A stretch of DNA of 64,000 nucleotides from IMGVR_UViG_3300036770_003657:124001-188000, one strand, 5' to 3'; shown: positions 4,264 through 57,821, counted from the stretch's first letter. Notes: generated by a model from the sequence alone, not told the origin. Translations and numbers: made by a program.

Positions 4264-4272
4264 GGAACGACG

Positions 4273-4518
4273 ATGACGTTGCGCTGGAATATTGATTTTA
4301 AGCCCGCAGACGCAGATTTCTGCTATGTCGACACCTACACAACTCATAATTCTAAAACATTCTACGAGAATATTTTTTACTGTAAGCCAGTAAAATATGA
4401 TGTCGATAGCACCCTATTAAATTATAACAATAATAACAAGCTATTCTACTCAACCTATTGGCCAAATAACGATATAACTCGTCATGCTGTAAGCCAAGGT
4501 GGTAGAATAAGCAGATGA
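4273..4518 (+). CDS. Small hypothetical protein (81 aa)
   Basis: SD AAGGA before the ATG; fills the gap between genes; its TGA overlaps the giant gene ATG (ATGA). Confidence 0.55.
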   Translation: MTLRWNIDFKPADADFCYVDTYTTHNSKTFYENIFYCKPVKYDVDSTLLNYNNNNKLFYSTYWPNNDITRHAVSQGGRISR

Positions 4519-7500: not shown

Positions 7501-10500
7501 TACAAGGCGTACAAGGTGTACAGGGTGTACAGGGTTTACAGGGCGTTCAAGGCGTTCAAGGTGTACAGGGCGTACAAGGCGTTCAAGGTGTACAAGGTGT
7601 ACAAGGTGTACAGGGTGTCCAAGGCGTACAGGGCGTTCAAGGTGTACAAGGCGTTCAAGGTGTACAAGGTGTACAAGGTGTACAGGGCGTACAAGGCGTA
7701 CAGGGTGTACAAGGTGTACAAGGTGTACAGGGTGTACAAGGTGTCCAAGGTGTACAAGGTGTACAGGGTGTCCAAGGTGTACAGGGTGTCCAAGGTGTCC
7801 AAGGTGTACAAGGTGTACAAGGTGTACAAGGTGTACAGGGTGTACAAGGCGTACAGGGTGTACAAGGCGTACAGGGTGTACAAGGTGTTCAAGGTGTACA
7901 GGGCGTTCAAGGTGTACAAGGTGTCCAAGGTGTCCAAGGCGTTCAAGGTGTCCAAGGTGTCCAAGGCGTACAGGGTGTACAGGGTGTACAAGGCGTACAG
8001 GGTGTACAAGGTGTACAAGGCGTACAAGGTGTACAAGGAGTACAGGGTGTTCAAGGCGTCCAAGGTATCCAAGGTATTCAAGGTCGCGGACCTGTATGGC
8101 GCGGTGATTGGAGTTCTACTGAACAATATCAAACAGATGATATGGTATACTATGATGGTAATACTTTTATTGCTATCACAGGCGACGCTACAACAAGATT
8201 CAGTGGTGTAGAAACTAGACCATTATTAAGCCCAGTAGGAGCAGGTTATCCAGGTGATGTGAACGATACTTACTGGAATAGAATGACCGCTCAGGGTGTC
8301 CAAGGTTTACAGGGCGTACAAGGTGTACAGGGTGTACAGGGTGTACAAGGAGTACAAGGAGTACAAGGTGTACAAGGCGTACAAGGCGTTCAAGGTGTAC
8401 AGGGCGTTCAAGGTGTACAGGGCGTTCAAGGCGTACAGGGTGTACAAGGAGTACAAGGTGTACAAGGCGTACAGGGTGTACAGGGTGTACAAGGCGTTCA
8501 AGGCAATCAAGGTGTGCAAGGTGTACAAGGAGTACAGGGTGTACAGGGTGTACAAGGTGTACAGGGCGTTCAAGGTGTACAAGGTAATCAAGGTGTCCAA
8601 GGTGTACAAGGCGTACAGGGCGTACAAGGTGTACAGGGTGTCCAAGGCGTACAAGGTGTACAAGGTGTGCAAGGCGTACAAGGCGTACAAGGCGTACAAG
8701 GCGTACAAGGTATACAGGGTGTACAAGGCGTACAGGGTGTACAGGGTGTACAAGGCGTACAAGGTGTTCAGGGTGTACAAGGTGTACAGGGCGTACAGGG
8801 CGTACAGGGTGTCCAAGGTGTACAAGGTGTACAGGGCGTTCAAGGTGTACAAGGTGTCCAAGGTGTACAGGGTGTACAGGGTGTACAGGGTGTACAAGGC
8901 GTACAGGGTGTACAGGGTGTCCAAGGTGTCCAAGGTGTACAAGGTGTACAAGGTGTACAGGGTGTACAAGGCGTACAGGGTGTACAAGGCGTACAGGGTG
9001 TACAAGGCGTACAGGGTGTACAAGGCGTTCAAGGCAATCAAGGTGTCCAAGGTGTCCAAGGTGTTCAAGGTGTACAAGGTGTACAGGGCGTTCAAGGCGT
9101 TCAAGGCAATCAAGGTGTACAGGGCGTTCAAGGCGTACAAGGTGTACAAGGCGTACAAGGCGTACAAGGCGTACAAGGTGTACAAGGTGTACAGGGTGTT
9201 CAAGGTGTACAAGGTGTACAGGGCGTTCAAGGTGTACAAGGTGTACAAGGCGTACAGGGTATTCAAGGATTTGGATTACGTTGGAAAGGCGAGTACGATC
9301 CTTCCACAATTTACCAACAAAATGATGTAGTTTATTATGACGGTGATAGCTTTATAGCAGTATATCCAATTGACCATTATAATGCACCGTTTGGACAATT
9401 CAGTGGTCAAGTACCAGAATTTACTCCAGGCGATGTAAACACTACATATTGGAATAGAATAACAGCTCAAGGTATTCAAGGTGTACAGGGTGTTCAAGGT
9501 GTACAGGGTGTTCAAGGTGTACAGGGTGTCCAAGGTGTACAGGGTGTACAAGGTCTACAAGGCATTCAGGGACTACAAGGTGTACAGGGTGTACAGGGTG
9601 TTCAAGGCGTCCAAGGTGTTCAAGGCGTCCAAGGTGTACAAGGCGTCCAAGGTGTTCAAGGCGTCCAAGGTGTACAAGGCGTCCAAGGTGTTCAAGGTGT
9701 ACAGGGTGTACAGGGTGTACAGGGTGTACAGGGTGTACAGGGTGTACAAGGCGTTCAAGGTGTTCAAGGTGTACAGGGTGTACAAGGCGTACAGGGTGTA
9801 CAAGGTGTACAGGGTGTACAAGGCGTACAGGGTGTACAAGGTGTACAGGGTGTACAGGGTGTACAGGGCGTACAAGGTGTACAGGGCGTACAAGGCGTAC
9901 AAGGTGTACAAGGTGTACAAGGTGTACAAGGCGTCCAAGGTGTACAAGGTGTCCAAGGTGTCCAAGGTGTACAGGGTGTACAAGGCGTACAAGGCGTACA
10001 GGGTGTACAAGGCGTACAAGGTGTACAGGGTGTACAGGGTGTACAAGGTGTACAAGGCGTTCAAGGTGTTCAAGGTGTTCAAGGTGTTCAAGGTGTACAA
10101 GGCGTACAAGGTGTACAAGGCGTACAGGGTGTACAAGGCGTACAAGGTGTACAGGGTGTACAAGGCGTACAAGGTGTACAGGGTGTACAGGGTGTACAAG
10201 GTGTTCAAGGCGTCCAAGGTGTACAAGGTGTACAAGGTGTACAAGGTGTACAAGGTGTCCAAGGCGTACAGGGCGTACAAGGTATACAGGGCTTTGGTAT
10301 TATCTGGCGTGGAATGTATGATTTCACAACAAGATATTATCAAAACGAAGTTGTTTTCTACAATGGTGCCAGCTGGATAGTTCGTTATACTGGTGTAGAA
10401 GGATTAACACCTGGTATAGATGACCCAACTACAGTACCAGGACCAGAATATAATGACACATATTGGGAATTACTAGCCAGCCAAGGTATCCAAGGATTAC

Positions 10501-13500
10501 AAGGTGTACAAGGTGTACAGGGTGTACAAGGTGTACAGGGCGTTCAAGGTGTACAGGGCGTACAGGGTGTACAGGGCGTACAGGGTGTCCAAGGTGTACA
10601 GGGTGTACAGGGTGTACAGGGTGTACAAGGTGTACAAGGCGTTCAAGGTGTACAAGGCGTTCAAGGTGTTCAAGGTATACAAGGTGTACAAGGTGTACAA
10701 GGTGTACAGGGTGTACAAGGTGTACAAGGTGTACAAGGCGTTCAAGGTGTCCAAGGTGTCCAAGGCGTTCAAGGTGTCCAAGGTGTACAGGGTGTACAAG
10801 GTGTACAGGGTGTACAAGGTGTCCAAGGTGTCCAAGGTGTACAGGGTGTACAGGGTCAGCAAGGTATTCAAGGTCTTGGATTTAATTGGCGTGGAGACTG
10901 GAAAGTAGATGAAGTATATGCCAAGAACGATGCTGTAAGGTATGATGGAACATCTTGGGTTTCTCTAACAAAAGATAATATAGGTAATAACCCAAGGCTT
11001 ACAGAAGGTGTTGAATGGGACGTAATTGCTGCACAGGGTGTACAGGGTGTTCAAGGTATTCAAGGTGTACAGGGCGTACAGGGCGTACAAGGTGTACAAG
11101 GCGTTCAAGGTGTACAGGGTGTTCAAGGCATTCAAGGATTCAGCTTTGTTTGGAGAGGTGAATACGATCACACAGCTGATTATCAACAGAATGATGTAGT
11201 TTATTATAATGGCAGTAGTTTTGTAGCTATTTGGCCAATTAATTTTTATGATGTCATTGGTAGCCAATTCAGTGGTGAAGTACCAGAAGTTATCGGAGTA
11301 TACGGTGAGCCAGGAACATTAAACAGTACATATTGGGCAAGAATGTCAGCTCAGGGCGTACAAGGTGTACAGGGTGTACAAGGCGTACAGGGTGTACAAG
11401 GTGTACAGGGTGTACAAGGCGTACAGGGTGTACAAGGTGTACAGGGTGTACAAGGTGTACAGGGCGTACAAGGTGTACAGGGCGTACAAGGTGTACAGGG
11501 TGTTCAAGGTGTACAAGGTGTACAAGGCGTTCAAGGCGTACAGGGTGTACAAGGAGTACAAGGTGTACAAGGTGTACAAGGCGTTCAAGGCAATCAAGGT
11601 GTACAGGGCGTTCAAGGCGTACAAGGTGTACAAGGCGTACAAGGCGTACAAGGTGTCCAAGGTGTACAAGGCGTTCAAGGCGTTCAAGGCGTACAAGGTG
11701 TACAAGGTGTACAAGGTGTACAGGGTGTACAAGGTGTACAGGGCGTTCAAGGCGTGCAAGGTGTACAAGGTGTACAGGGTGTTCAAGGTGTACAAGGTGT
11801 ACAAGGTGTACAAGGTGTACAAGGCGTACAGGGTGTACAGGGTATACAGGGTGTCCAAGGTGTCCAAGGCGTACAGGGTATACAAGGTTTTGGTATTATT
11901 TGGCGTGGATATTACGACTTCAATACTACATATTTCCAAAACGAAGTTGTTTTCTATGATGGAAATAGTTGGATAGTAAAATACACTGGAGTAGAAGGTG
12001 TTCCTACAGGTATCAGTAATCCAGCAGCAGTTCCTGGACCAACCGATATTGATACTTGGTGGGAAAGATTAAGTAGCCAAGGTATTCAAGGTTTACAAGG
12101 CGTTCAAGGTGTACAAGGTGTACAAGGCGTTCAAGGTGTACAAGGCGTTCAAGGTGTACAGGGTGTACAGGGTGTACAAGGTGTACAAGGCGTACAGGGT
12201 GTACAGGGCGTTCAAGGCGTTCAAGGTGTACAGGGCGTACAAGGCGTACAGGGTGTACAAGGTGTACAAGGCGTACAAGGCGTACAAGGTGTACAAGGCG
12301 TACAAGGTGTACAAGGCGTTCAAGGTGTACAAGGTGTACAAGGCGTTCAAGGCGTACAAGGCGTTCAAGGCGTACAAGGCGTACAAGGTGTACAGGGTGT
12401 ACAAGGCGTCCAAGGCGTTCAAGGCGTCCAAGGCGTACAAGGTGTACAAGGCGTACAGGGTGTACAAGGCGTACAGGGTGTACAAGGTGTCCAGGGTATC
12501 CAAGGTATACAAGGCGGACAGGGTATACAAGGCGTACAGGGCGTTCAAGGTGTACAAGGTGTACAAGGCGTACAGGGTGTACAAGGCGTACAGGGTGTAC
12601 AAGGCGTACAGGGTGTACAGGGCGTACAGGGTGTACAAGGCGTACAGGGTGTACAAGGCGTACAGGGTGTACAAGGCGTTCAAGGCGTACAGGGCGTTCA
12701 AGGTGTCCAAGGTGTACAGGGTGTACAGGGTGTACAAGGTGTCCAAGGTGTACAGGGTGTACAAGGTGTACAAGGTGTACAGGGTGTACAAGGTGTCCAA
12801 GGTGTACAAGGACAACAAGGTATTCAAGGCGGCGGTGTAACTTGGAAAGGCATTTGGAATTCAACAACTAATTACATTGAAAATGATGCAGTATTTTACA
12901 ATGGTAATTCTTGGATCAGCGTATTAGAACCAAATATAGATAATGTACCTAATTTAATGTCAATTTATTGGGACATGCTTGCTAGCCAAGGTATTCAAGG
13001 CTTGCAAGGCGTACAGGGTGTACAGGGTGTACAGGGCGTTCAAGGTGTACAGGGCGTTCAAGGTGTACAGGGCGTTCAAGGTGTACAGGGCGTTCAAGGC
13101 GTACAGGGTGTACAGGGCGTACAAGGTGTACAGGGTGTACAGGGTGTACAGGGTGTACAGGGTGTACAGGGTGTACAGGGTGTACAGGGCGTACAGGGCG
13201 TACAGGGCGTACAGGGCGTACAAGGTGTACAGGGTGTACAGGGTGTACAAGGTGTACAAGGCGTACAAGGCGTACAGGGCGTTCAAGGTGTACAGGGCGT
13301 ACAGGGCGTTCAAGGTGTACAAGGTGTACAGGGTATTCAAGGTGTACAGGGTATTCAAGGTGTAGGATTAATATGGAAAGGTCAGTGGAGTGATTCAGTA
13401 TCTTACATAGCCAACGACATTGTATTTTACGATGGCAGTGCTTATATTTCAGTTCAGTCAACTAACCTAAATAATAATCCAACAATTGAAGATAGATCAA

Positions 13501-16500
13501 CTGAATTTACAACGCCTGGAACTTATACTTGGATAGCACCTCCAGGAGTTACCAGTGTAAGTGCTGTAGCAGTTGGTGGTGGATCTAGACCACAAATAAT
13601 AGGTAGTGGATTCAGCGCCAAGAGTTATGGTGGTGGCGGTGGTGGTTTAGGTTATAAGAATAATATACCAGTCGTTCCTGGCCAAGCTTATACAGTAGTA
13701 GTTGGTAGTGGAGCAGCCACAGGCACATATGGTGATGGTGGTGATAGCTACTTTATCAGTTCAATTACAGTAAAAGGTGGCGGAGCTACTGGCAGCACAG
13801 GTGGTACTTATGTAGGTGATGGCGGTGGTAGCGGTGGTAACGGTGGTGCACCAAACGGAAATTCAAGTGGCGGCGCAGGTGATGGCAGTGCTACATCAGG
13901 TGGTGGTGGTGGTGCAGGTGGTTATAGTGGCAACGGTGGCGTTGGCGGAACTATGTTGGTTGACAGTGGTAATGGAGCCAATTTTGGTGCTAACGGCAGT
14001 GGTGGCGGTGGTGCTGGTGGTGGCGGAAGAAATAGTCACGGTGGCGGCGGTGGCGGTGGTGTTGGTATCTATGGCGAAGGAGACAGTGGACTTGCCAATA
14101 CTACTGCTTATGTACCAAACGTAGGTGGCTGGGGCGGCAATGGTGGTAGTGGTGGTACTACTGGTGGTACTGGAACTCAATCAGGTGTTAATGGTGGTGG
14201 CGGCCTATACGGTGGTGGTGCTGGTGGTGGCTGGGCTGGATATGGTGATGCTGCTGGTGGTGGTGCAGTAAGAATCATATGGGGTGCAGGACGTAGTTTC
14301 CCAAGCACAAACGTCAGTACTGCTAGTGATTTTGTTGAAACATCTACCAATGTTCAATACTGGCAGCGATTTACCAGTCAAGGTATACAGGGCGTACAAG
14401 GTCTTCAAGGTGTACAGGGCGTACAGGGCGTACAGGGCGTACAGGGCGTACAGGGTGTACAAGGCGTACAGGGTGTACAAGGCGTACAAGGTATCCAAGG
14501 TGTACAAGGTGTACAGGGTATCCAAGGTGTACAGGGTGTACAAGGTGTACAGGGTGTACAAGGTGTACAGGGTGTACAAGGTATACAGGGTGTACAAGGT
14601 ATACAGGGTGTACAGGGTGTACAGGGCGTACAGGGCGTACAGGGTGTACAGGGTGTACAAGGTATCCAAGGTGTAAGTATAACTTGGAAGGGAGTTTATG
14701 ATAATGCCGCTCAATATAGCCAAAATGACGTAGTATTTGAAAACGGCAGTAGTTGGATAGCAGTTTATCCATATACAAGTGGAACGTTTAGTGGCATAAG
14801 ACCAGGTGAAACAGTAGGTTGGATCACATATTGGAATATGATGACCAGCCAAGGTATTCAAGGTGTACAGGGTGTACAGGGTGTACAAGGTATTCAAGGT
14901 GTACAGGGTGTACAAGGTATTCAAGGTGTACAGGGTGTACAGGGTATACAAGGTGTACAAGGCGTACAAGGTATTCAAGGTGTCCAGGGTGTACAGGGTA
15001 TACAAGGTGTACAAGGCGTACAAGGTATTCAAGGTGTACAGGGTGTACAAGGTATTCAAGGTGTACAGGGTATCCAAGGTGTACAGGGTGTACAGGGTAT
15101 ACAAGGTGTACAGGGTGTACAGGGTATACAAGGTGTCCAGGGTGTACAGGGTGTACAGGGTATACAAGGTGTACAGGGTGTACAGGGTATTCAAGGTGTA
15201 CAGGGTGTACAGGGTATTCAAGGTGTACAAGGCGTACAAGGTATCCAAGGCGGTCAAGGTATTCAAGGTGTACAGGGTGTACAAGGTATCCAAGGCGTCC
15301 AAGGTGTACAAGGTATTCAAGGTGTACAGGGTGTACAAGGCATCCAAGGTGTACAAGGTGTACAAGGTATTCAAGGCGGTCAGGGTATACAAGGTGTACA
15401 AGGTATACAGGGTGTCCAAGGCATCCAAGGTGTACAAGGTATTCAAGGCTTCCAAGGCACCAAGGGTGAGGGCTTTACATTCTTGGGAGATTGGAGTCCT
15501 GTAACAGAATATATTAAGAATGACAGTGTATACTATAATGGTTCAAGCTATACAAGCACTTACGGTGATATAACATATGCTGGAGGTGGATTTGCTAATA
15601 TTAATCAACGTCCAGGTGAACTAGTAACAATATCAAATGTTAGCCTAACTGCTAGTGGTGTATTCAGTTGCGATAGTGTAAACCTATATAAAGCAGAAGT
15701 TATTAGAGTAAGTGGTACAGTTCCAGCAGGATTTACAATTGAGAATCCAGATAGTCCTGCTCAAGCTCCAACTTACTATACAGCTGGTCAACAAGTTGAT
15801 AATGATTATTATGTAATCACATATCCAAATAATCCAACTACAACCTTTACATTAGGACGTAGTCAATTCTCTGTAGATCCAATTAGTACAACTGGTACAG
15901 GCAGTTTAAGTGGGTTAACATTTAAGGCTGTTCCATGGTTAATTATTAGTGCTCAAGGTATTCAAGGATTACAAGGTGTACAAGGTATACAGGGTGTACA
16001 AGGTATACAGGGTGTACAAGGTATACAGGGCGTACAGGGTGTACAAGGTATACAAGGTGTACAAGGTGTACAAGGTATTCAAGGTGTACAAGGTATTCAA
16101 GGTGGTCAGGGCATACAAGGTGTACAAGGTATTCAAGGTGTACAAGGTATACAGGGTATTATTGGTACTCCAGGTGGTTATACAGCAAATTATAATTGGG
16201 ATAGTAGCACAGCAGTTGCCGATCCAGGTGTAGGTAATGTAACTATTGAGCGTAGTTGGACAGATCAAACTGCTGGTCAAGTTTATATCAATCTTGACAA
16301 GTATGACGCAGATGGACAAGATCGTGCAGCGTGGGTCAATGCTATCAAGTTCTTTGGTAGCGCAAGTAGCTACTATGGTGTTATTACAATTATGCCAGAA
16401 GGTGCTACAAATCAGCGCTGGACCGGTGTTATCACCGTAGTAAATGATCTCAGTACACATTTTAGACTACAGCTAACCTTTGTTGATAGTCAAGGATCAG

Positions 16501-19500
16501 CCCCAACAGTTGGACAAAAATTAGGCGTCAGCTTCCAGCCAGCTGGTCAACAGGGTATCCAAGGCGTACAAGGTATCCAAGGCGTACAAGGTATCCAAGG
16601 TGTACAAGGTGTACAAGGTATCCAAGGTGGTCAAGGCATCCAAGGTGTACAGGGTGTACAAGGTATACAAGGCGTACAAGGCGTACAAGGTATCCAAGGC
16701 GTACAAGGTATCCAAGGTGTACAGGGTGTACAGGGTATACAGGGTGTACAAGGCGTACAAGGCATACAAGGTGGTCAAGGCATACAAGGCGTACAGGGTG
16801 TACAGGGTATCCAAGGTGTACAAGGTGTACAGGGTATACAGGGCGTACAGGGTGTACAAGGTATCCAAGGTGGTCAAGGCATCCAAGGTGTACAGGGTGT
16901 ACAGGGTATACAGGGCGTACAGGGTGTACAAGGTATACAAGGTGGTCAAGGTATACAAGGTGTACAGGGTGTACAGGGTATACAGGGCGTACAGGGTGTA
17001 CAAGGTATCCAAGGTGTACAAGGTATACAGGGTATTCAAGGTTCAAGTATCACGTGGAGAGGCCAATACAGTCCAACAACTGTATACAATACAAACGACG
17101 TAGTATTTGAAAATGGTCAAAGCTGGGTTGGTGTAAGAGGTACAGGTAATAGTCAAACATTAACTAGTGTAGCACACAGCGGTAGTGGTGTGTTTACTTG
17201 TGCTGCTGCTACATTATTTGTTGGTGACCAAGTTACTGTAAGTGGAACAAATGGTGGCAACGTAGTATTACCAGGATACAGTGCTAGTGGTACAAATTAT
17301 TATATTATAGCTACAAATGGTACTACACAATTTACTTTAAGTACTACACTAAACGGATCTGCTGCTACAGCTACCACAGGTACTACAGTCAGTGGATCAA
17401 TGATATTTGTTGTACCAACAGGATTTGGAAATGTAAGACCTAACCTAACACAAACTAATCATTGGAACTTAATGACTAGCCAAGGTATCCAAGGTGTACA
17501 GGGTGTACAGGGTGTACAAGGTATCCAAGGTGTACAGGGTGTACAGGGTATACAAGGTGGTCAAGGCATACAGGGTGTACAAGGTGTACAGGGTGTACAA
17601 GGCATACAAGGTGGTCAAGGTATCCAAGGTGTACAAGGTATACAGGGCGTACAAGGTGTACAAGGTATCCAAGGTGTACAGGGTATTCAAGGTATTACTG
17701 GTTTAGGTATTACTTGGAAAGGAACTTGGACTAGTTCAACAGTTTACAATAGCAATGACGTAGTATTCTACAACGGCAATAGCTGGATTGGTGTACGTGG
17801 AACAGGTAACAGTGTAGCATTAAGTGGTGTAAGTATCGGGGCTAGTGGCGTAATATCCTGTACTGCTACAAGCTTGCCAGCAGGATTCCAAGTAGGTGAT
17901 CAAGTTCTAGTTGCAGGCATTAATAGTGGAACTGGTGCATTACCAAGTTACAGCGCCAGCGGCACTTACTATTATATTATAGCTACAAATGGTAGCACAC
18001 AATTTACCATAAGTACAACAGCTGGTGGTGCTGCTGCTAGTACAACTTCTGGTACTGTAAGTGGTGCAATGACCTTTACTGTAGCAACAGGTTTTGTCAA
18101 TGTCATTCCAAACTTAACTAATACAAACCACTGGAACCAAATGACCAGCCAAGGTATCCAAGGCATCCAAGGTGTACAAGGTGTACAGGGCATACAAGGT
18201 GTACAAGGTGTACAGGGTATACAAGGTGTACAAGGACGTCAAGGTGTACAGGGTGTACAAGGTATCCAAGGTGTACAAGGTGTACAAGGTATACAAGGTG
18301 GTCAAGGCATTCAAGGTGTACAGGGCGTACAAGGTATACAGGGTGTACAAGGACGTCAAGGTGTACAGGGTGTACAGGGCATACAGGGTGTACAAGGCGT
18401 ACAAGGTATACAGGGTGTACAAGGCGTACAAGGTATACAAGGTGGTCAAGGCATTCAAGGTGTACAGGGTGTACAAGGTATACAGGGTGTACAAGGTGTA
18501 CAAGGTATCCAAGGCGTACAGGGTCAGCAAGGTATTCAAGGTTCAGGCTTTAAGTGGCGTGGTGTTTGGGCTCCACAATTTGACTATGCTGTTAGTGATA
18601 TGGTATCACACTTGGGTAGCACATATGTTAGCTTAACTCAGTATCTTCCACAAACACTAGCAAATGTTCAAATTATATCTGCTGGTAAAATAACTTGTAA
18701 CACTCCAACTAATGCATTAAATCCAGGTGATGGTCTTTATGCTATAGGTGTTAAAACTGGAACAGGGTCTATAACTGGTTATAATAGTGCAGGAACAAAT
18801 TATTTCATAACAACAGTTAGCAATAATGCTGGCACTACTACATTAACTTTAAGTGCCAATTATAATCCGTATGTAACAGTTAGTACCACAGCAGGTACAA
18901 GCACTGGTATTACTTTCTACGCACCAACTTTTGTACCAACTAGCTTTACTAAAGATCAATATGATAATGGTCAATCAAGTGTAGGTGCTTGGCAGTTAGC
19001 AGGTTCACAGGGTATTCAGGGTGTACAAGGCGTACAAGGTGTACAAGGTATACAGGGCGTACAAGGTATACAGGGCGTACAAGGAGTACAGGGTATACAA
19101 GGTGTACAAGGTATACAGGGTATTCAAGGTGCAAGCCCAACTTGGAGAGGAACATATACAAGTGGTGTAGCATACAATACTAACGATATGGTATTCCATA
19201 ATGGTAATACATATATGGCCATTTATGGTACAGGTAATACTGTAGCATTAAGTGGTGTAAGTATTGGAGCTAATGGAACATTTACTTGTACAGCAGCAAG
19301 CCCAGCTCTTGTAGTTGGTAATGGTGTTAGAATCGTGGGCGCTGCCAGTGGTACTGGTAGTATTAGTGGTTACACAGAAGGTGCAACTTATTATATCACA
19401 GCTACAAACGGTAGTACAAGCTTTACTTTAAGTTCCACAATCGGCGGTGCAGCAGTAACAACTACTGCTGGTACAAGCACAGGATTAACATTCCAACATC

Positions 19501-22500
19501 CAGTAAGTTTTGCTAATCAAGTTCCAGCAACAGGTCAACCCCCAGTAGTTAATACAACTTACTGGAATCAGATGACCAGCCAAGGTATCCAGGGTGTACA
19601 GGGTGTACAGGGTGTACAAGGTATCCAAGGTGTACAAGGCGTACAAGGTATACAAGGTGGTCAAGGTATACAGGGTGTACAGGGTATACAGGGCGTACAA
19701 GGTATACAAGGTATTCAAGGCTTTAGTGTAACTTACAGAGGACAATACAATCCTGCTACAGTATACACACAGAACGATGTGGTATTTGAAAATGGACAAA
19801 GCTGGATTGCTATATGGCCAATTACAACAAGTACATTTAGTAATGTAAGACCAGGAGTAACAGCAGGTTGGGCTAACTATTGGGGCAACTTAACTAGCCA
19901 AGGTATACAGGGTGTACAAGGTGTACAAGGTGTACAAGGTATTCAAGGTGTACAAGGACGTCAAGGTGTACAAGGTATACAAGGTGTACAAGGCGTACAA
20001 GGTATTCAAGGTGTACAAGGTGTACAGGGTATACAGGGATTAAGTATCAATTGGAAAGGCCAGTTTAATCCTGCTACAGCATATAGTCAAAACGATGTAG
20101 TATTTGAAAACGGCGCAAGCTGGATAGCAAAATGGCCATATGCTAGTGGAACCTTTACAGGAATCAGACCAGGAGTAACAGTAGGCTGGGCTACATACTG
20201 GGATCAAATGACCAGCCAAGGTATCCAAGGTGTACAGGGTGTACAGGGTATCCAAGGTGTACAGGGTGTACAGGGTATCCAAGGTGTACAGGGTGTACAA
20301 GGTATACAGGGTGTACAAGGTGTACAAGGTATCCAAGGTGGTCAAGGTATACAAGGCGTACAAGGTATTCAAGGTGTACAAGGCGTACAAGGTATTCAAG
20401 GTGTACAGGGTGTACAAGGTATACAGGGCTTTAGTGTAACTTATAGAGGAATCTATAACAATGCTACAGTTTATACTCAAAATGATGTAGTATTTGAAAA
20501 TGGACAAAGTTGGATAGCAGTGTATCCAATTACAACAGGTACATTTAGTGGTCAACGTCCAAGTTTAGCAAATACAACATATTGGGGTCAATTAACAAGT
20601 CAAGGTATACAGGGTGTACAAGGTGTACAAGGTATACAAGGTGGTCAAGGTATCCAAGGTGTACAAGGTGTACAAGGTATACAGGGCGTACAAGGTGTAC
20701 AAGGTATCCAAGGTGTACAGGGTGTACAGGGTATACAGGGTGTACAAGGACGTCAAGGTGTACAGGGCATACAAGGTGTACAGGGTGTACAAGGTATACA
20801 AGGTGTACAAGGTGTACAAGGTATCCAAGGTGGTCAAGGTATCCAAGGCGTACAAGGTATTCAAGGTGTACAAGGTGTACAGGGTATCCAAGGATTTAGC
20901 GTAACTTACAGAGGAATATATAATAACGCCACAGTTTACACTCAAAATGATGTAGTATTTGAAAATGGACAAAGTTGGATAGCAGTATATCCAATAACTA
21001 GTGGAACATTTAGTGGTCAACGTCCAAGTTTAGCAAACACAACATATTGGGGTCAGTTAACAAGTCAGGGTATACAAGGTGTACAGGGTGTTCAAGGTAT
21101 TCAAGGTGGTCAAGGTATACAAGGTGTACAAGGTATACAAGGTATCCAAGGTGGTCAAGGTATTCAAGGTGTACAGGGTGTACAGGGTATACAGGGTGGA
21201 CAAGGTATTCAAGGTCGTCAAGGTATACAAGGTATCCAAGGTGGACAAGGTATACAGGGTATTCAAGGTGGTCAAGGTATCCAAGGTGTACAAGGTGTAC
21301 AAGGTATCCAAGGTGGACAAGGTATCCAAGGTGTACAAGGCGTACAAGGTATACAGGGTGGACAAGGTATACAAGGAGTACAGGGTGTACAAGGTATACA
21401 AGGTGGACAAGGTATTCAAGGTATCCAAGGTATCCAAGGATTTAGTGTTACATATCAAGGTGTATACAATAATGCTACAGTGTACACTCAAAATGATGTA
21501 GTATTTGAAAATGGACAAAGCTGGATTGCAATATATCCAGTAACAACAGGAACATTTAGTGGAATACGTCCAGGTGTAACAGTAGGTTGGGCTACATATT
21601 GGGGTAGATTAAGTCAACAAGGTATACAGGGTATACAGGGTGGACAAGGTATACAGGGTGTACAAGGTATCCAAGGTATCCAAGGTGGACAGGGCATACA
21701 GGGTGTACAAGGTATCCAAGGTATCCAAGGAGGCCAAGGTATTCAAGGTATCCAAGGTGGCCAAGGTATACAGGGTGTCCAAGGTGTTCAAGGTATACAG
21801 GGTGGACAAGGTATACAAGGTAGACAGGGTATACAGGGTCAACAAGGACTACAGGGTACACAGGGTCAACAAGGTATCCAAGGACAGCAAGGTACACAGG
21901 GTATACAGGGTCAACAAGGACTACAGGGTACACAAGGACAACAAGGTATCCAAGGTCAACAAGGTACACAGGGTATACAGGGTCAACAAGGATTACAGGG
22001 TACACAAGGACAACAAGGTATACAAGGTCAACAAGGTACACAGGGTATACAGGGTCAACAAGGTACACAAGGACTACAGGGTACACAAGGACAACAAGGT
22101 ATACAAGGACAGCAAGGTACACAGGGTATACAGGGACAACAAGGTACACAAGGTCAGCAAGGTATACAGGGTACACAAGGTCAGCAGGGGACACAAGGTG
22201 TTCAAGGATTCCAAGGATTCCAAGGTTATCAAGGTGTACAGGGTGAACAAGGTATACAGGGTGTACAAGGTATTCAAGGATTCCAAGGATTTATTGGTGA
22301 TCAAGGTACAACAGGTTCACAAGGTACAACAGGTGATACAGGCTTACAGGGATTACCAGGACCACAAGGTACAGATGGACAAACTGGAGCACAAGGTCCA
22401 CAAGGTCCACAAGGTTTAGATGGAACAATTGGAACATTAAGTTTAGCAACATTCAAGAGCGTAGTAGCAGGTGCCGCAAACTTCCAAGACTTCCAAACAG

Positions 22501-22517
22501 CAGTAGCAGCACTATAA
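4515..22517 (+). CDS. Giant collagen-like (Gly-X-Gln)n fibre protein with repeated Trp-rich bead modules (6000 aa)
   Basis: Uninterrupted 18-kb ORF with Gly at every third residue in the tracts ([12 protein letters not shown]). Tracts are separated by 25 W(R/K)G.[WY]..Y..ND.V.(Y/F).G.S[WY]...P...YW modules, one of which holds a Gly-rich domain. Confidence 0.9.
5430..22220 (+). repeat. Degenerate 9-bp coding tandem repeats (GG[T/C] [G/A]T[A/T/C] CA[A/G])n in about 25 tracts
   Basis: Directly visible, e.g. ggtgtacaa/ggtgtacag/ggcgtacaa; variation is mostly at third codon positions. Confidence 0.95.
21828..22043 (+). repeat. 72-bp higher-order repeat x3 ([24 protein letters not shown])
   Basis: Units at 21828-21899, 21900-21971 and 21972-22043 encode the same 24 aa. 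Confidence 0.85.
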
Positions 22518-22531
22518 GGAGATGATGAGTA

Positions 22532-25372
22532 ATGCCAATTAATTTAGATCAGACGGGCCCAGCGCATTTATTAAGCACCGATGAAGATGGTCTGATCCTT
22601 AATGGCAGTCCAGTCATCTCAAAGAGTATTCACGTTAGTGATATCGAACCAAAAACTTATTTTGGTGATACTAATACTAAATTACTTTGGCTAGATACTG
22701 GTGTACAAGGTGTTAGTAGCTTCCCTAACGGTGGAGCAGCCAATTGGATATTGAGAACTAATGGCAATGGCACAGTAAGTTGGATTCCACCTAGTACTTT
22801 AGATGCTACAAAGTTTCATTATAGAACTAGTACTAATAATACAGCACCAGATCCATTAGGTTTAGGTCCAGGATCTGGGTATGTACGATTTGTCAGGGAT
22901 GAAGAAATAGATCCAATGAGTACTGCTACAAAACTTGTAATTAGTAGTTATAGTGTTGCAGGAGATCCTAATTACATTATGGGAGCTACACCTGGAGTAC
23001 CAAGTTATAATGACATTGGTAGTTTTATAAATGGGTTAAGTGCTTATGGTAATAATAGCCGTAGAGGATTTATCAAGGTAGAAAAGGAAAACGATCCTAA
23101 TCATTTTCAAATTTATAGTTTTAGTACCATAGTAGATAGAGTAGGTTGGTTTGAAATTGATGTTGAAATCGTAAGAGTTGAGACTGGGGATGAAAATTTT
23201 CCTAACGATGAGCCAGTCAGTGTGAACTTTAGTGTGGCAGGCCCCGAGGCATTGACTCAAGATTTAAGTAATTATGTCACTTTTACAGGAACTCAAACAC
23301 TAACGAACAAAACTATAACAACACCAATAATTACAGAACCATCAATTAATAATAAGAGCACTATGCTCACTGATGTTGCTATTGGAAGTAATGGGACCTT
23401 CACCTGTAATGCATCTACTCTTAGAGTACATGATGCTTTAAGAGTAACAGGCCTAAATGCAGGCGATGGATCTATTACTGGATACGATGATGTTAGTGCT
23501 GTATATTTTATTACAGCGACAAATGGTACCACAAGCTTTACCCTAAGTGATACTTTAGGTGGCGTAGCCATAACCACAGTCGCAGGAACAGTTAGTGGAG
23601 CAATGACTTTTACAAATAATGTAGGTGGGATAATTTCTTTTGATGATGCTGATCCAACTAATGGTTTTGAAACAAGGTTAACTGTAATTAGTAGCAGTGC
23701 AGATCATAAAATTATACTTCCAGATGCAACTACTACTCTTGTAGGTATTGATAACACTCAAACTTTAACTAATAAGACTATCATTGAGCCAATTATACAT
23801 GATCCTGAAGTAATTATTACAGATGATGATGTTAATATAACCATAAGCAGTAATATTGCAACAAGTTTCAATAGCAGAATTAATACAGCTGATGCTAAAA
23901 CATATAGTTGGGCAACAAATTATTATTTTGATGGCACGAATTGGCTTAAAGATAATGATAATAGAGGTGGATGGCGTCTAAGTAAAGTAGCAGATATAAC
24001 GCTAGATGCTAATAATAAAATAATTTTAGGCTATGCTCCAATAGGTAGTAATGTAGAAGATCAAAAATTAATATTAAATGGAGATGGTCAGTTAGAATTA
24101 ACTTCAAATATAGCTAGTACAACTACAAGCACTGGTACACTGGTTGTTGATGGCGGTGTTGGAATTAGTGCCGATGTTAATATCGGAGGTGATACTAATA
24201 TAACCGGAACACTTGAAGCAGGAGCAATTGAAAGTACACCGATAGGTTTATCATTCAGATCAACTGGCGCATTTACTTCTTTGGCAGCAAATGGTATACT
24301 GCAAGTAACTGATGCTACAGCCAGTATAAATCAAACAACTGGAGCAGCAGTTATTACTGGTGGACTAGGGGTAGGAGGTGCTGCTTATGTAAATGGTCCA
24401 GTATACTTAAATGCTATAGATCCATTAGACGAAACAGAACTAACAGGGTATAGTTTAGTAGTTCAAAATCCACAGGCTAAAGTAAGGGTAGGGCCTAATT
24501 ATATTGATGGTGCTGTAGATTATATTGATATTTTGACACTTGAAGATAACCCAACAATTACTACTACCAGTGTAAATTTTACATTGGATAATTTACAAAG
24601 TGGTGGTAATATTACATTAACTGCTACAGATGCTTCAGTAATAGTAACTGCAAATACTGCCTCTACAGATAAAGTAACAGGCGCATTAAAAGTAGCAGGT
24701 GGTATCGGTGTTGAGTTAGATATTCATGCTGATGATATCTATGTATATGGACAAACTGGATTAAATGACACTGCCAGTCAAGTAGTAAGTCTAGCAGCAA
24801 CTCAAACATTAACAAATAAAACAATTAATGCCCCTACTATTGATGATGTAGTACTTACTGGCACAGTTAGTGCTAATAGTAGCACAGGTATCGCAGGACA
24901 ATTATTATCAAGCACAGGAACTGGTGTCGAATGGGTTAATCCTGTAACTAATAGTGCTGTAGTATTTTATAAAGCCAGTGATCAAAACTTTTTTACAGCA
25001 GCTACAGTTACATTGCCTGCTAGTCCAACTATTGTAGTAGGATCAGATTTTGGTGATATGAATGCTGCTGGTAGTGGAATCTTTACTTTTAGTGTGGCTG
25101 GTACATATCAAATCATTATCAATTACAGTGTAAGTGATACGGGTGGTGGAGCAACTTATCCAACAGTAGATTTTTGGGTAAGAAAAAATAGCGCAGATAC
25201 TATAAAGTATTGTCAAATTTTAACAAATGGTTCACGAAGAGGTGCTGTAACTGAATATATTGAGTTTGATGTAAATGATACTGTACAATGGTATGTCAAT
25301 AGCACATTACGAGTAAACGGCGGTAGCCCTAGTGCTACAGGCAGTAGATTTACTATTGTTCGAGTAGAATAA
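22532..25372 (+). CDS. Fibre/structural protein (946 aa) sharing modules with the giant fibre
   Basis: SD AAGGAG at 22516-22521; LWLDT motif, repeated TQTLTNKT, GGxG(I/V) beta-repeats, and an ATNGTTSFTLS module also present in the giant protein. Confidence 0.75.
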   Translation: MPINLDQTGPAHLLSTDEDGLILNGSPVISKSIHVSDIEPKTYFGDTNTKLLWLDTGVQGVSSFPNGGAANWILRTNGNGTVSWIPPSTLDATKFHYRTSTNNTAPDPLGLGPGSGYVRFVRDEEIDPMSTATKLVISSYSVAGDPNYIMGATPGVPSYNDIGSFINGLSAYGNNSRRGFIKVEKENDPNHFQIYSFSTIVDRVGWFEIDVEIVRVETGDENFPNDEPVSVNFSVAGPEALTQDLSNYVTFTGTQTLTNKTITTPIITEPSINNKSTMLTDVAIGSNGTFTCNASTLRVHDALRVTGLNAGDGSITGYDDVSAVYFITATNGTTSFTLSDTLGGVAITTVAGTVSGAMTFTNNVGGIISFDDADPTNGFETRLTVISSSADHKIILPDATTTLVGIDNTQTLTNKTIIEPIIHDPEVIITDDDVNITISSNIATSFNSRINTADAKTYSWATNYYFDGTNWLKDNDNRGGWRLSKVADITLDANNKIILGYAPIGSNVEDQKLILNGDGQLELTSNIASTTTSTGTLVVDGGVGISADVNIGGDTNITGTLEAGAIESTPIGLSFRSTGAFTSLAANGILQVTDATASINQTTGAAVITGGLGVGGAAYVNGPVYLNAIDPLDETELTGYSLVVQNPQAKVRVGPNYIDGAVDYIDILTLEDNPTITTTSVNFTLDNLQSGGNITLTATDASVIVTANTASTDKVTGALKVAGGIGVELDIHADDIYVYGQTGLNDTASQVVSLAATQTLTNKTINAPTIDDVVLTGTVSANSSTGIAGQLLSSTGTGVEWVNPVTNSAVVFYKASDQNFFTAATVTLPASPTIVVGSDFGDMNAAGSGIFTFSVAGTYQIIINYSVSDTGGGATYPTVDFWVRKNSADTIKYCQILTNGSRRGAVTEYIEFDVNDTVQWYVNSTLRVNGGSPSATGSRFTIVRVE

Positions 25373-25424: not shown

Positions 25425-26168
25425 ATGCTAGAATTAGGAATGTATTGCCTATGTTATGTAGGCCGAGAACCAAAAAATTATCAGTATAACCAACACAACT
25501 TAATGTGCGGGTCTGTTAATTATAATCAATTTGACGTTTTAGAAATGCAACGTCGAGGATTCTTAATGGATCATGTGGGTGAAAACATAAGTCATATGAA
25601 TAATGACTTTGGTAGTCTTACAGGATTGTATTGGGTTTGGAAAAATGCTGATCATGACTACAAAGGAACTAATACATATCGTATTTTTTGGAATGAAGAT
25701 TTTAATCTTAGACCAAATACTGTATATATTCCTGAAGCAAAAGATATAGTTACTGCTATAAAAGGATATGCTCCTAATGTAAACAGTGTATATGATCATT
25801 TTAGTCATTGTCATAATAGTTTAGGGTGGCAATTATTATATGGACTTGCTGGTGATCGACGTATACCTATTAGTATAGACATGATTGATGACCTTAGGAA
25901 TTACAAATATCTCATTCCTTTCCACATGTTTACAGCAGATAGAGTAACCTTTAATCGTATTTGTGAAATATTGTTTCAAATATTGTTTGAATTTCATGCT
26001 AATTATCAATACTTTTTACCAGAAATTCATAAACGTACTCAACAAGTAAGATTTTATGATTTTTTTGGTGAAAGAATATTACATATTATCCTAACAAATA
26101 ACTATTATTTTTTAGGAAATACAGATATAAGACATTTAAATATACTGGATATAGACCATCATGCTTGA
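25425..26168 (+). CDS. DUF4422-like putative glycosyltransferase
   Basis: GENISHMNNDFGSLTGLYWVWKN resembles the DUF4422 signature (DNISxxNxxxxELTxxYWxWKN); later GERIL motif. Confidence 0.65.
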   Translation: MLELGMYCLCYVGREPKNYQYNQHNLMCGSVNYNQFDVLEMQRRGFLMDHVGENISHMNNDFGSLTGLYWVWKNADHDYKGTNTYRIFWNEDFNLRPNTVYIPEAKDIVTAIKGYAPNVNSVYDHFSHCHNSLGWQLLYGLAGDRRIPISIDMIDDLRNYKYLIPFHMFTADRVTFNRICEILFQILFEFHANYQYFLPEIHKRTQQVRFYDFFGERILHIILTNNYYFLGNTDIRHLNILDIDHHA

Positions 26169-49814: not shown

Positions 49815-49815
49815 T

Positions 49816-57813: not shown

Positions 57814-57821
57814 GATAGTTT

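What the first reader, a model, noticed from the sequence alone, without database searches (positions are those of the whole stretch)
13362..19582. One bead loop acts as a socket for nested passenger domains
Seen: between the NG.SW strand and the terminal P..YW, the bead at 13362 holds a ~280-aa Gly-rich domain (about 13480-14330: [25 protein letters not shown]). Five later beads hold an ~85-aa beta module (V.I..G.FTC..YYI.ATNG.T.FTLS..GT..G.TF) at about 15624-15923, 17160-17408, 17820-18077, 18657-18917 and 19248-19493. Inference: a cassette architecture in which receptor-binding domains are inserted at one permissive loop without breaking the collagen register.
Basis: partly seen in the sequence, partly recalled or inferred. 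Interest (0 to 1): 0.65.

Follow-up and report, generated by a model that had tools for sequence, protein, structure and literature searches.

The report
Domain-display knots on a phage collagen fibre
A 400-kb phage encodes a 6000-residue collagen-like fibre whose small chitin-binding-type knots carry whole extra domains spliced into their last loop region, and related phages show the same knots empty or holding other domains, so they look like a natural display scaffold.

Summary
The interval lies in one 6000-aa ORF (4515-22517, +) of a 399,796-bp jumbo myovirus. It has 28 Gly-X-Gln collagen runs (1187 triplets) interrupted by 25 CBM5/12-fold beads. Six beads are split by an inserted domain at the stated coordinates. 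One holds a 270-aa Gly_rich_2 domain, homologous to the TNF-like/polyglycine receptor-binding tip of cyanophage Pam3 gp24. Five hold an 87-104-aa six-stranded beta-barrel of a large family with no Pfam match, mostly free-standing elsewhere.

An AF2 model of one nested bead (pLDDT 93) shows the two bead halves re-forming a chitin-binding fold around the barrel.

The "one loop" claim is only partly right. In this window the inserts enter at two points, before and after the conserved Arg-Pro. Relatives show a third point.

The cassette idea is supported by comparison. IMG/VR holds a family of such fibres, with about 190 plain and 31 interrupted distinct beads. Recognisable bead lineages occur empty, with a barrel, with a doubly nested barrel, or with another bead. 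Other beads in relatives carry one or two Gly-rich domains or a fourth "IDNEY" tail module.

Receptor binding and preservation of the collagen register remain inferred. Verdict: new variant of known principles.

The parts
4515..22517 (+). Giant collagen-like fibre gene, 6000 aa (P0001). It has 28 Gly-X-Gln runs and 25 CBM5/12-like beads. It also has an N-terminal 76-aa domain (aa 39-114), one 121-aa non-bead domain and a 25-aa C-terminal tail.
   Evidence: Collagen PF01391 scores 80.7 and 146.1 bits against a cut-off of 27.2.
13368..14381 (+). Bead aa 2952-3289, split by a Gly-rich domain. The N-part runs 13368-13493 and includes the conserved Pro (NNNPTIED). The C-part is 14304-14381 (..[12 protein letters not shown]). 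Entry point B, after the conserved Pro.
   Evidence: L076 aa 2165-2215 is the positionally corresponding bead without an insert.
13494..14303 (+). Passenger 1: a TNF-like plus glycine-rich (polyglycine-II lattice) domain of 270 aa.
   Evidence: PF21722 at 31.6 bits and phrog_4474 at E 2e-47. The AF2 core is confident. Fold matches are Pam3 fibre 7ypx_A (Z 16.2, 173 residues aligned, 27% identity), Bxb1 tail tip 9d93 (Z 11.3) and ALK GRD (Z 6.4-6.7).
14679..14852 (+). Plain 58-aa bead (aa 3389-3446). It is an example of the uninterrupted form with [16 protein letters not shown] between strand 3 and the terminal YW.
15474..15956 (+). Bead aa 3654-3814 (the 'FTFLGDW' lineage), split after RPGE. 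Entry point B.
   Evidence: Relatives of this lineage are empty (L074), hold a barrel (L002, L076, L077, L080, L084) or hold a second bead (L075).
15621..15932 (+). Passenger 2: a divergent beta-barrel module of 104 aa.
   Evidence: With its L002 ortholog it forms a separate, long-branched pair (SH-aLRT 100) in the quick tree.
16182..16544 (+). 121-aa non-bead domain between two collagen runs (aa 3890-4010). It has no family match.
   Evidence: It is conserved in L002 and present seven times in L076.
17049..17483 (+). Bead aa 4179-4323, split before TGFGNVRP. Entry point A. This is the bead that was modelled.
17157..17417 (+). Passenger 3: a six-stranded beta-barrel module of 87 aa.
17709..18152 (+). 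Bead aa 4399-4546 with a barrel passenger at 17814-18086. Entry point A.
18549..19001 (+). Bead aa 4679-4829 (the '[18 protein letters not shown]' lineage) with a barrel passenger at 18654-18926. Entry point probably A.
   Evidence: The lineage is empty in L074 and L075. It holds a single barrel here and in L077, L083, L084 and L090. It is doubly nested in L002 and L076.
19137..19583 (+). Bead aa 4875-5023 with a barrel passenger at 19242-19502. Entry point A.
23369..23617 (+). Free-standing copy of the same barrel module, not inside a bead. It lies in the neighbouring 946-aa virion protein (ORF 22532-25372, aa 280-362).
   Evidence: The ORF matches phrog_692/697 structural proteins.

Best explanation
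The interval is the middle and distal part of a giant homotrimeric collagen-like fibre of a jumbo contractile-tailed phage.

Its collagen runs would span about 1 micrometre if fully extended. They are tied together at 25 knots, each made of small CBM5/12-fold (chitin-binding-type) domains.

The stretch of the knot between its third strand and its final Trp tolerates the insertion of whole domains whose two ends lie close together.

In this phage six knots are occupied:
- One carries a TNF-like/polyglycine domain of the kind that forms the receptor-binding tip of other phage fibres.
- Five carry a small beta-barrel that is common in phage tail and fibre proteins.

In the predicted trimer the knot cores and the collagen flanks make the contacts around the axis, and no passenger residue is among the confident contacts. 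Each occupied knot would therefore display three copies outward.

The likely job is multivalent, low-affinity adhesion to host or environmental surface glycans along the length of the fibre. Specificity would change when passengers are gained, lost, duplicated or exchanged.

Shown: the architecture, the split fold for one bead, the homologies, and the variable occupancy in relatives. Inferred: trimer geometry, virion location, ligand binding, and the mechanism of exchange.
For: Architecture:
- A single ORF with 28 collagen runs and 25 beads.
- Collagen PF01391 lies well above threshold.

Bead identity:
- The plain-bead profile hits ChiA1 ChBD 1ed7 at E 0.0017 and aligns to ChiC 2d49.
- The bead halves of the AF2 model superpose on CBM5/12 of 4ny2 (Z 6.8, rmsd 1.4 A, 47 residues). 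They also superpose on 2d49, 1ed7 and 8yug, and on the fibres of phages 7-7-1 (9rkv) and Pa193 (9b45).

Nested fold:
- pLDDT 93.4 and pTM 0.86.
- The 47 aligned residues cover a contiguous 49-residue stretch of 4ny2. The two ends of the passenger must therefore sit within loop-closing distance.

Passengers:
- The Gly-rich domain matches Pam3 gp24 at Z 16.2. That domain is described as the receptor-recognising tip (PMC9608196).
- The barrel matches FNR/EF-Tu-domain-2/E1-FCCH-type barrels. It also matches barrels inserted in phage proteins: the Mystique tail tube 9n71 and the phi92 endosialidase 4hiz (Z 5.9-7.0).

Trimer:
- Three copies of aa 4155-4347 score ipSAE 0.43 against a best control of 0.00. 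That mark was reached by 21 of 30 solved pairs and 0 of 23 single chains. Runs agree in at least 92% of contacts, and partner pLDDT is at least 73.
- The confident contacts are the collagen flanks in a one-residue stagger plus bead residues 4179-4183, 4194-4207 and 4318-4323. None falls in the passenger, aa 4215-4301.

Cassette behaviour:
- 35 fibre-like ORFs (at least 300 aa of collagen) were examined, from IMG/VR plus the window. The 27 that carry beads give about 190 distinct plain beads and 31 interrupted ones.
- The interrupted beads carry four passenger types, or five counting the doubly nested barrel.
- The same bead lineage occurs in different occupancy states.

Mobility of the barrel:
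- It is mostly free-standing or tandem in non-collagen phage proteins.
- It is also found inside Gly-rich domains (P0095, P0114) and directly between collagen runs (P0133).
- Free copies occur in two other structural ORFs of this same genome.

Virion context:
- The gene sits among genes for the neck adaptor, a gp15-like protein, the sheath, the tube and the terminase.
Against: - No experiment or proteome shows that the protein is in the virion, that it trimerises, or that it binds anything.
- Every bead falls below Pfam's CBM_5_12 gathering score (best 20.5 bits against 26.2).
- An aromatic residue at the position aligned to ChiC's Trp pair is present in only 12 of 19 plain beads. The knots may therefore be purely structural.
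- Refolding of the bead around the large Gly-rich insert was not resolved. The bead halves have pLDDT below 50, probably because that alignment held no bead rows.
- No bead with a site-B or site-A' insert was modelled successfully.
- In Pam3 the Gly-rich domain is a terminal, axial trimer. Here it is internal, so it may not work in the same way.
- The barrel's fold matches are of middling strength (Z below 8) and carry no functional information.
- The module tree is poorly resolved. The number of independent insertion events is therefore only estimated.
- Array lengths in repetitive 9-bp DNA could be mis-assembled. The repeats are imperfect, at 70-89% matches.
Confidence: 0.7

Rival explanations
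1. The knots and passengers are architectural rather than adhesive. The CBM-fold trimers act as registration and nucleation staples. They let very long, proline-poor Gly-X-Gln helices fold segment by segment and give the fibre hinges. The passengers mediate fibre-fibre bundling or docking onto the capsid, neck or sheath.
For: - In the trimer model the bead cores sit on the threefold axis between two staggered triple helices.
- Beads recur every 10-109 triplets along the whole protein.
- The aromatic residue expected at a ligand-binding position is absent in 7 of 19 plain beads.
- The same barrel fold occurs as an insertion in tail-tube and connector proteins, where it is structural (9n71 and 9jlf; connector cluster).
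- The gene lies next to neck genes.
Against: - The Gly-rich passenger belongs to a family whose solved member is a receptor-recognising fibre tip.
- Occupancy and passenger type vary between close relatives, which is typical of host-interaction parts rather than conserved scaffolding.
- No passenger residue is among the confident contacts in the trimer model.
Confidence: 0.2
2. The fibre is an environmental anchor rather than a host-receptor device. Many weak chitin- or polysaccharide-binding knots would tether the virion to particles, exoskeletons, mucus or biofilm matrix where hosts are dense. This resembles Ig-like capsid decorations that bind mucus. The passengers would only broaden the range of matrices bound.
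For: - The beads have the CBM5/12 chitin-binding fold.
- There are 25 knots, which in a trimer would be 75 CBM copies.
- The calculated length is extreme, about 1 micrometre.
- The fibre family comes from environmental viral contigs.
Against: - No ligand was tested.
- Sequence matches to CBM5/12 are sub-threshold.
- The presence of a bona fide fibre-tip domain argues for at least one specific receptor contact.
- The host and habitat of this phage were not identified.
Confidence: 0.2
3. There is no nesting. The long interruptions are simply a degenerate half-bead, a separate domain and a short linker in tandem. The apparent C-terminal bead piece would be a chance YW..Q motif that precedes every collagen run.
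For: - For two beads (aa 3654 and aa 4679) the profile gives no significant C-terminal hit.
- The L075 'bead in bead' can also be read as a half-bead followed by a whole bead.
Against: - The C-terminal pieces of beads 4179, 4399 and 4875 align to profile nodes 35-60 at E 4e-5 to 8e-5.
- The AF2 model packs both pieces into one domain. That domain superposes on a contiguous solved CBM at 1.4 A.
- Ortholog alignments show clean insertions relative to empty beads.
Confidence: 0.05

Closest known systems
Cyanophage Pam3 tail fibre gp24 (PDB 7ypx/7yfw) and the related Bxb1 tail-tip protein (9d93); more distantly S16 gp38 and the ALK/LTK glycine-rich domain
   Same: The 270-aa passenger shares the TNF-like sandwich plus glycine-rich lattice. 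Against Pam3 gp24 it scores Z 16.2, with 173 residues aligned and 27% identity. It also carries the family motifs YT.PGTY.W..P.GV..V and [16 protein letters not shown].
   Different: In Pam3, and in 30 or more IMG/VR loci, the domain is C-terminal or in tandem at the end of a protein. Here it is internal, spliced into a CBM5/12 bead at the midpoint of a collagen fibre, and the chain returns to collagen after it. No Pam3 gp25-like chaperone was looked for.
CBM5/12 chitin-binding domains of chitinases (ChiA1 1ed7, ChiC 2d49, ChiB 8yug, V. cholerae deacetylase 4ny2) and small CBM5/12-like domains in phage 7-7-1 and Pa193 fibres
   Same: The fold and the sequence pattern W...Y..GD.V.Y.G..Y......P....W are shared.
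   Different: - The beads fall below the Pfam gathering score.
- They are used as repeated interruptions of a collagen helix.
- In the model they sit on the trimer axis.
- They serve as hosts for inserted domains.
- Ligand binding is untested.
'Evolved' Dit and Tal proteins of lactococcal and streptococcal siphophages (CBMs inserted in loops of baseplate proteins), and the beta-barrel inserted in the propeller of endosialidases (4hiz, endoNF)
   Same: The principle is the same: an accessory binding-type domain is spliced into a loop of a phage adhesion-device protein, with variable presence between related phages (PMC7533335 and PMC9692632 listed; 4hiz).
   Different: Here the host domain is itself a 50-70-aa CBM-fold bead repeated many times in a collagen fibre. 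The passengers are different families. Several different passengers occur along one polypeptide.
Collagen-like surface fibres: B. anthracis BclA and Pasteuria fibres, Streptococcus phage collagen-like receptor-binding regions, mimivirus fibrils, and animal collectins, C1q and ficolins
   Same: A Gly-X-Y trimeric stalk presents globular recognition domains.
   Different: Those fibres carry one globular head at an end. This one has 25 internal globular nodes, six of them carrying extra domains. It uses almost only Gly-Val-Gln and Gly-Ile-Gln triplets. This comparison rests on general knowledge, not on a test made here.
E1 ubiquitin-activating enzyme FCCH domain (PF16190) / EF-Tu domain 2 / FNR FAD-binding barrel
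   Same: The passenger is a six-stranded closed barrel of this general shape (Z 5.4-7.0). One viral Atlas cluster near it is auto-named E1_FCCH.
   Different: None of the 94 members scanned matched PF16190 at E<=0.01. The likeness is at the fold level only.

Membership tests
Collagen triple-helix repeat (PF01391) | Long uninterrupted Gly-X-Y repeats scoring above the Pfam gathering threshold | tested here: met
   There are 28 runs and 1187 triplets. Scores are 80.7 and 146.1 bits against a cut-off of 27.2.
Collagen triple-helix repeat (PF01391) | Three parallel chains in a one-residue stagger | tested here: inconclusive
   The predicted trimer scores ipSAE 0.43 against a best control of 0.00, with staggered contacts such as 4162 with 4163. 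This is a model only, and its calibration used two copies, not three.
CBM5/12 (PF02839) | Sequence score above the Pfam gathering threshold (26.2 bits) | tested here: not met
   The best window bead scores 20.5 bits at E 4.9e-4. The best relatives score 23.2 bits.
CBM5/12 (PF02839) | The compact three-stranded-plus-hairpin chitin-binding fold | tested here: met
   4ny2 gives Z 6.8, rmsd 1.4 A and 47 aligned residues. 2d49 aligns 46 of its 53 residues and 1ed7 aligns 42 of its 45. The bead profile hits 1ed7 at E 0.0017.
CBM5/12 (PF02839) | Exposed aromatic residues that bind chitin | tested here: inconclusive
   The position aligned to ChiC W59 is Tyr or Trp in 12 of 19 plain beads and 2 of 6 nested beads. 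The role of that Trp pair is from my recollection of the literature. No binding data exist.
Gly_rich_2 (PF21722) / Pam3 gp24-type fibre tip | Sequence score above the Pfam threshold, and the TNF-like plus glycine-rich-lattice fold | tested here: met
   The score is 31.6 bits against 24.3. 7ypx_A gives Z 16.2 and 9d93 gives Z 11.3.
Gly_rich_2 (PF21722) / Pam3 gp24-type fibre tip | Position at the distal (C-terminal) end of the fibre | tested here: not met
   The domain lies at aa 2994-3263 of 6000 and is followed by 2700 further residues. In 30 IMG/VR loci it ends the protein or is in tandem.
Gly_rich_2 (PF21722) / Pam3 gp24-type fibre tip | A dedicated trimeric chaperone encoded next to the fibre gene | not tested
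   The neighbouring ORFs were scanned against Pfam and PHROGs only, and none was named a fibre assembly protein.
E1_FCCH (PF16190) | Sequence match to the family profile | tested here: not met
   None of 94 barrel sequences matched at E<=0.01. None of the window's copies matched at E<=1.
Evolved Dit/Tal-type CBM insertions | The host protein is a distal-tail (Dit) or tail-associated lysin (Tal) baseplate protein | tested here: not met
   The host here is a collagen-like fibre with CBM5/12 beads. This family is an analogy of principle only.

The most novel reading that the evidence does not exclude
The CBM5/12 bead of these collagen fibres is a dedicated natural display scaffold. It would be a minimal, trimer-forming knot whose last loop region accepts almost any domain with adjacent termini. 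One fibre could then carry several different receptor specificities in series, each in three copies. Phages would retune or widen what they stick to by inserting, deleting, duplicating or nesting passengers, through recombination within and between fibres and with other structural genes of the same genome.
Probability: 0.35. Interest if true: 0.75.

Novelty: new variant of a known kind. Interest (0 to 1): 0.58.

Why it matters
Phage host recognition is usually pictured as one binding domain at the tip of a fibre. Here a single polypeptide about a micrometre long would present dozens of small lectin-fold knots and, spliced into some of them, complete extra domains. One of those is a bona fide fibre-tip type.

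Relatives show the same knots empty, occupied, doubly occupied or holding other domains. That makes three things directly testable:
- How modular adhesion devices evolve.
- What the "hairs" seen on some jumbo phages might be made of.
- Whether a 50-residue trimeric knot can serve as a general insertion scaffold for displaying foreign domains on collagen-like stalks.

The work also defines a large beta-barrel family with no Pfam match (449 representative proteins at E<=1e-3) that recurs in phage structural proteins.

Tried and rejected
- Megablast of the interval and of the sheath gene against 50,697 phage records found nothing.
- tblastn of bead aa 4179-4323 against the same records found nothing at E<=1e-3, possibly because of the low-complexity filter.
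- Pfam and PHROGs give no family for the barrel passenger or for the 121-aa domain.
- AF2 of the Gly-rich bead left the bead halves unmodelled, at pLDDT below 50.
- hmmalign in global mode misplaced the C-terminal bead pieces. Local hmmsearch replaced it.
- The careful maximum-likelihood tree of 75 barrel modules did not finish. The quick tree has 45 of 72 inner branches unresolved. I use it only for the separate placement of the site-B module pair.
- A Gly-rich HMM built from A4 found nothing among the genome's ORFs, not even the known copy. I treat this as a composition-correction artefact and draw no conclusion from it.
- The idea that nested beads have lost the ligand-binding aromatic residue is not supported. 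The residue is present in 12 of 19 plain beads and 2 of 6 nested beads.
- Foldseek against the PDB gave no hit at E<=0.001 for the nested bead model. The VIA-align wide search was needed.
Distances between entry points A and B, and between passenger termini, could not be measured. Adjacency of the termini is inferred from the contiguous CBM superposition.
- No sequencing-run tools, alternative genetic codes, or the large word-index protein search were used.

Full report
**Where the finding lies**

The window is bases 124001-188000 of a single 399,796-bp contig with 36.6% G+C. Several genes mark it as a jumbo contractile-tailed phage:
- a 1121-aa tail sheath, 41-48% identical to those of Sinorhizobium phage Phosso, Agrobacterium phage Atu_ph07 and Pseudomonas phage PA5oct;
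- two tail-tube genes;
- a gp15-like sheath stabiliser;
- a head-tail adaptor;
- a large terminase.

The whole finding sits in one ORF, 4515-22517 on the + strand, of 6000 aa (P0001). Genes matching glycosyltransferase families (DUF4422, GT2) follow it.

**Anatomy of the protein**

Segmentation gives 28 collagen runs with 1187 Gly-X-Y triplets. Of these, 813 are GVQ and 212 are GIQ. Run lengths range from 5 to 109 triplets. The runs score far above Pfam's collagen threshold.

At 0.286 nm per residue (a textbook value) the helices alone would span about 1.0 micrometre.

The DNA consists of imperfect 9-bp repeats with 70-89% matches.

Between the runs lie 25 beads of 51-70 aa with the pattern W.G.[WY].....Y...D.V.Y.G.S[WY]......P....YW...Q. 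Other non-collagen parts are:
- an N-terminal 76-aa domain (phrog_21918);
- one unrelated 121-aa domain at nt 16182-16544;
- a 25-aa C-terminal tail.

**What the beads are**

Every bead gives a sub-threshold Pfam match to CBM_5_12, at E 5e-4 to 0.03. Beads also match tail-fibre PHROGs 5073 and 9851.

A profile of 20 plain beads finds the chitin-binding domain of Bacillus chitinase A1 (1ed7, E 0.0017). It also finds a baseplate protein of the Anabaena contractile injection system (7b5h, E 1e-4), and it aligns to the ChiC domain 2d49.

The beads therefore have the CBM5/12 fold. By Pfam's own score they are not members.

**The inserted domains**

Six beads are far longer than the rest.

(a) Bead aa 2952-3289 contains a 270-aa glycine-rich domain.
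- It passes the Pfam threshold for Gly_rich_2 and matches phrog_4474 at E 2e-47.
- Its AF2 core is confident.
- It matches the cyanophage Pam3 fibre gp24 strongly (7ypx_A: Z 16.2, 173 residues aligned, 27% identity).
- It also matches the Bxb1 tail tip (Z 11.3) and the ALK glycine-rich domain (Z 6.4-6.7).
- In Pam3 this TNF-like plus glycine-rich unit is the distal part, described as recognising the host receptor (PMC9608196).

(b) Beads aa 3654, 4179, 4399, 4679 and 4875 contain an 87-104-aa module (alignment A2).
- A profile of it finds 449 representative proteins at E<=1e-3 and 159 at E<=1e-10.
- No Pfam family matches it, in the window copies or in the 94 rows of alignment A3 (the nested beads plus stand-alone relatives).

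**Do the bead halves refold?**

For bead aa 4179-4323, the answer in silico is yes.
- With a 94-row alignment, AF2 gives pLDDT 93.4 and pTM 0.86.
- Structural alignment splits the model cleanly in two.
- Residues 3-144 contribute only 42-47 aligned residues, and these superpose on solved CBM5/12 domains: 4ny2 (Z 6.8, rmsd 1.4 A), 4tx8, 4hmc, 8yug, 2d49 and 1ed7. They also superpose on the fibres of phages 7-7-1 and Pa193.
- Residues 34-126 form a six-stranded barrel. It resembles the FNR FAD-binding domain, EF-Tu domain 2 and the E1 FCCH domain. It also resembles the barrels inserted in the phage Mystique tail tube and the phi92 endosialidase (Z 5.9-7.0).
- The matched stretch of 4ny2 is contiguous: 49 residues, 47 of them aligned. 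The two ends of the barrel must therefore nearly touch.

For the Gly-rich bead the test failed. The bead flanks were modelled at pLDDT below 50, and the alignment contained no bead rows.

**One socket or several?**

I built a 60-node profile from the 19 plain beads. The conserved Arg-Pro sits at nodes 45-46.
- In beads 4179, 4399 and 4875 the N-terminal hit ends at nodes 35-44 and the C-terminal hit starts at nodes 35-40.
- The insert therefore enters before the G.F.G.RP element, for example [12 protein letters not shown] ^ ... ^ [11 protein letters not shown].
- In beads 2952 and 3654 the N-terminal hit runs through the Arg-Pro to nodes 48-49.
- There the insert enters just before the terminal YW, for example [12 protein letters not shown] ^ ... 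^ PWLIISAQ and NNNPTIED ^ ... ^ TNVQYW.
- Bead 4679 is probably of the first kind.

There are two entry points here, about 12 profile positions apart, on either side of the most conserved loop residue.

**Trimer model**

Three copies of aa 4155-4347 score ipSAE 0.43 against a best control of 0.00.
- That mark was reached by 21 of 30 solved pairs and 0 of 23 single chains.
- The calibration used two copies, not three.
- The runs agree in at least 92% of contacts, and partner pLDDT is at least 73.

The confident contacts are the collagen flanks in a one-residue stagger, together with bead residues 4179-4183, 4194-4207 and 4318-4323. No residue of the passenger (4215-4301) or of the entry-point segments is listed. 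This fits knots on the axis with passengers pointing outward. It is a model, not a measurement.

**Where else the passengers occur**

In IMG/VR the barrel is mostly free-standing or tandem in proteins without collagen (L004-L017). Among the 150 best representative proteins:
- only 5 have 36 aa or more of collagen;
- only one (P0042) is clearly a nested bead;
- 82 of 151 neighbouring module pairs lie 15 aa or less apart.

The barrel also occurs inside Gly-rich domains (P0095, P0114) and directly between collagen runs (P0133).

In this genome, free copies lie in two other ORFs:
- the neighbouring 946-aa virion protein (window 23369-23617);
- a 6682-aa ORF just upstream of the window.

The Gly-rich domain in 30 IMG/VR loci is C-terminal or tandem, ending [19 protein letters not shown].

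Both passengers are therefore independent, mobile domains. It is their adjacent termini, as much as the bead loop, that make nesting possible.

**Homologous fibres**

A scan with the plain-bead alignment returned 72 loci. Together with the window protein, 35 ORFs have at least 300 aa of collagen, and several are longer than 3000 aa. The 27 of them that carry beads contribute about 190 distinct plain beads and 31 distinct interrupted beads.

- **L001.** A 99% identical fragment of the window fibre.
- **L002.** The same fibre at about 64% identity, with the same order of beads.
- **L076 (5654 aa).** An ortholog whose bead at the position of the Gly-rich bead is empty (aa 2165-2215).
  - Three of its distal beads carry a different passenger of about 65-80 aa, with the motif IDNEY..L.GLTRG..GT.A..H..GA.V. 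This passenger matches pieces of tail and baseplate PHROGs.
  - It enters at a third point, between G.F.G and RP.
- **FTFLGDW bead lineage.**
  - Holds the barrel in six fibres.
  - Holds a second CBM-like unit in L075. That bead is 78% identical over the N-half by my count. It could alternatively be read as a half-bead followed by a whole bead.
  - Is empty in L074.
- **FKWRG..W.LA bead lineage.**
  - Empty in L074 and L075.
  - Singly occupied here and in four other fibres.
  - Doubly nested in L002 and L076, with a further insert of about 72 aa inside the barrel.
- **L074.**
  - One bead holds a Gly-rich domain.
  - Another holds two in tandem; Pfam confirms two stretches.
  - By inspection both are entered after the conserved Pro.

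BFVD and the ESM Atlas also contain uncultured-phage proteins annotated ChiC_BD or CBM5/12 that align across both bead and barrel.

**How many insertion events?**

The four site-A beads of the window resemble each other over flanks and passenger alike (47-65% identity over the whole bead for the three clear ones, 35% for aa 4679). They are best read as duplications of one nested bead.

The site-B barrel is a long-branched lineage of its own, with SH-aLRT 100 for the window-plus-L002 pair. The rest of that tree is unresolved. With the Gly-rich insertion, this gives at least three events in this protein.

**Interpretation**

The architecture is well supported: a collagen-like fibre with CBM-fold knots whose last loop region hosts passenger domains. 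So is its cassette-like variability among relatives.

Function is inferred. The Gly-rich passenger points to receptor recognition. The CBM fold and the barrel, which resembles the barrel domain of endosialidases, point to glycan adhesion. The number of copies points to avidity.

The main alternatives are a purely architectural role, as registration staples and docking sites, and environmental anchoring.

"Without breaking the collagen register" cannot be evaluated. Every bead, occupied or not, interrupts the helix. The trimer model merely shows staggered helices on both sides.

**Novelty**

Each ingredient is known:
- collagen-like phage proteins;
- CBM5/12-like domains in fibres;
- the Pam3-type tip;
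- domains inserted in loops of adhesion-device proteins (evolved Dit/Tal, the endosialidase barrel).

I found no description of this combination: a repeated minimal knot in a giant collagen fibre used as an insertion site for several domain families, with nesting up to two levels. The searches included two jumbo-phage reviews that do not mention collagen at all. The library is incomplete, so this is absence of evidence only.

I rate it a new variant of a known kind.

Noticed in passing
window 53093-60028 (within the 25-30% G+C block 48000-64000): At least five consecutive genes encode radical-SAM proteins (PF04055), one of them with a SPASM domain. The flanking genes have no family match. The block is much lower in G+C than the structural region.
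   Followed up: no
genome (G000:C1) 103124-123169 (+) and 52846-67248 (-), outside the window: There are two more giant ORFs, of 6682 aa and 4801 aa. The first carries two free-standing copies of the barrel module. The second has weak bead-like hits.
   Followed up: partly
window 16182-16544: A 121-aa globular domain that is not a bead sits between two collagen runs. It has no Pfam or PHROG family. It is conserved in L002 and present seven times in the L076 fibre.
   Followed up: partly
window 25425-26168 and 27421-28200: Genes matching glycosyltransferase families (DUF4422; GT2 / phrog galactosyl transferase) lie directly downstream of the fibre and its neighbour. This raises the question of whether the Ser/Thr-rich passengers are glycosylated.
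   Followed up: no
window 30256-31560 (-): A 434-aa virion structural protein (phrog_11591) ends with a CBM5/12-like bead (phrog_5073 match at aa 351-399). The bead is therefore also used outside collagen fibres in this phage.
   Followed up: no
L074:2538-4322 and L076:10760-11437 (also L002:4224-4892): Relatives show higher-order nesting. One has two tandem Gly-rich domains inside a single bead. Others have a second insert of about 72 aa inside the barrel passenger of the FKWRG bead lineage.
   Followed up: partly
window 33182-36547: The tail sheath is unusually long at 1121 aa and contains a flagellin-IN-type motif, suggesting extra surface domains.
   Followed up: no
window 4629-4856 (aa 39-114): The N-terminal 76-aa domain (phrog_21918, E 1e-8) also appears, by eye, in another collagen-containing protein, P0133 (..W.V.HNLG......V...G......Y....F.......L.F......GYAA.TSGG). 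It may be the attachment or trimerisation end.
   Followed up: no
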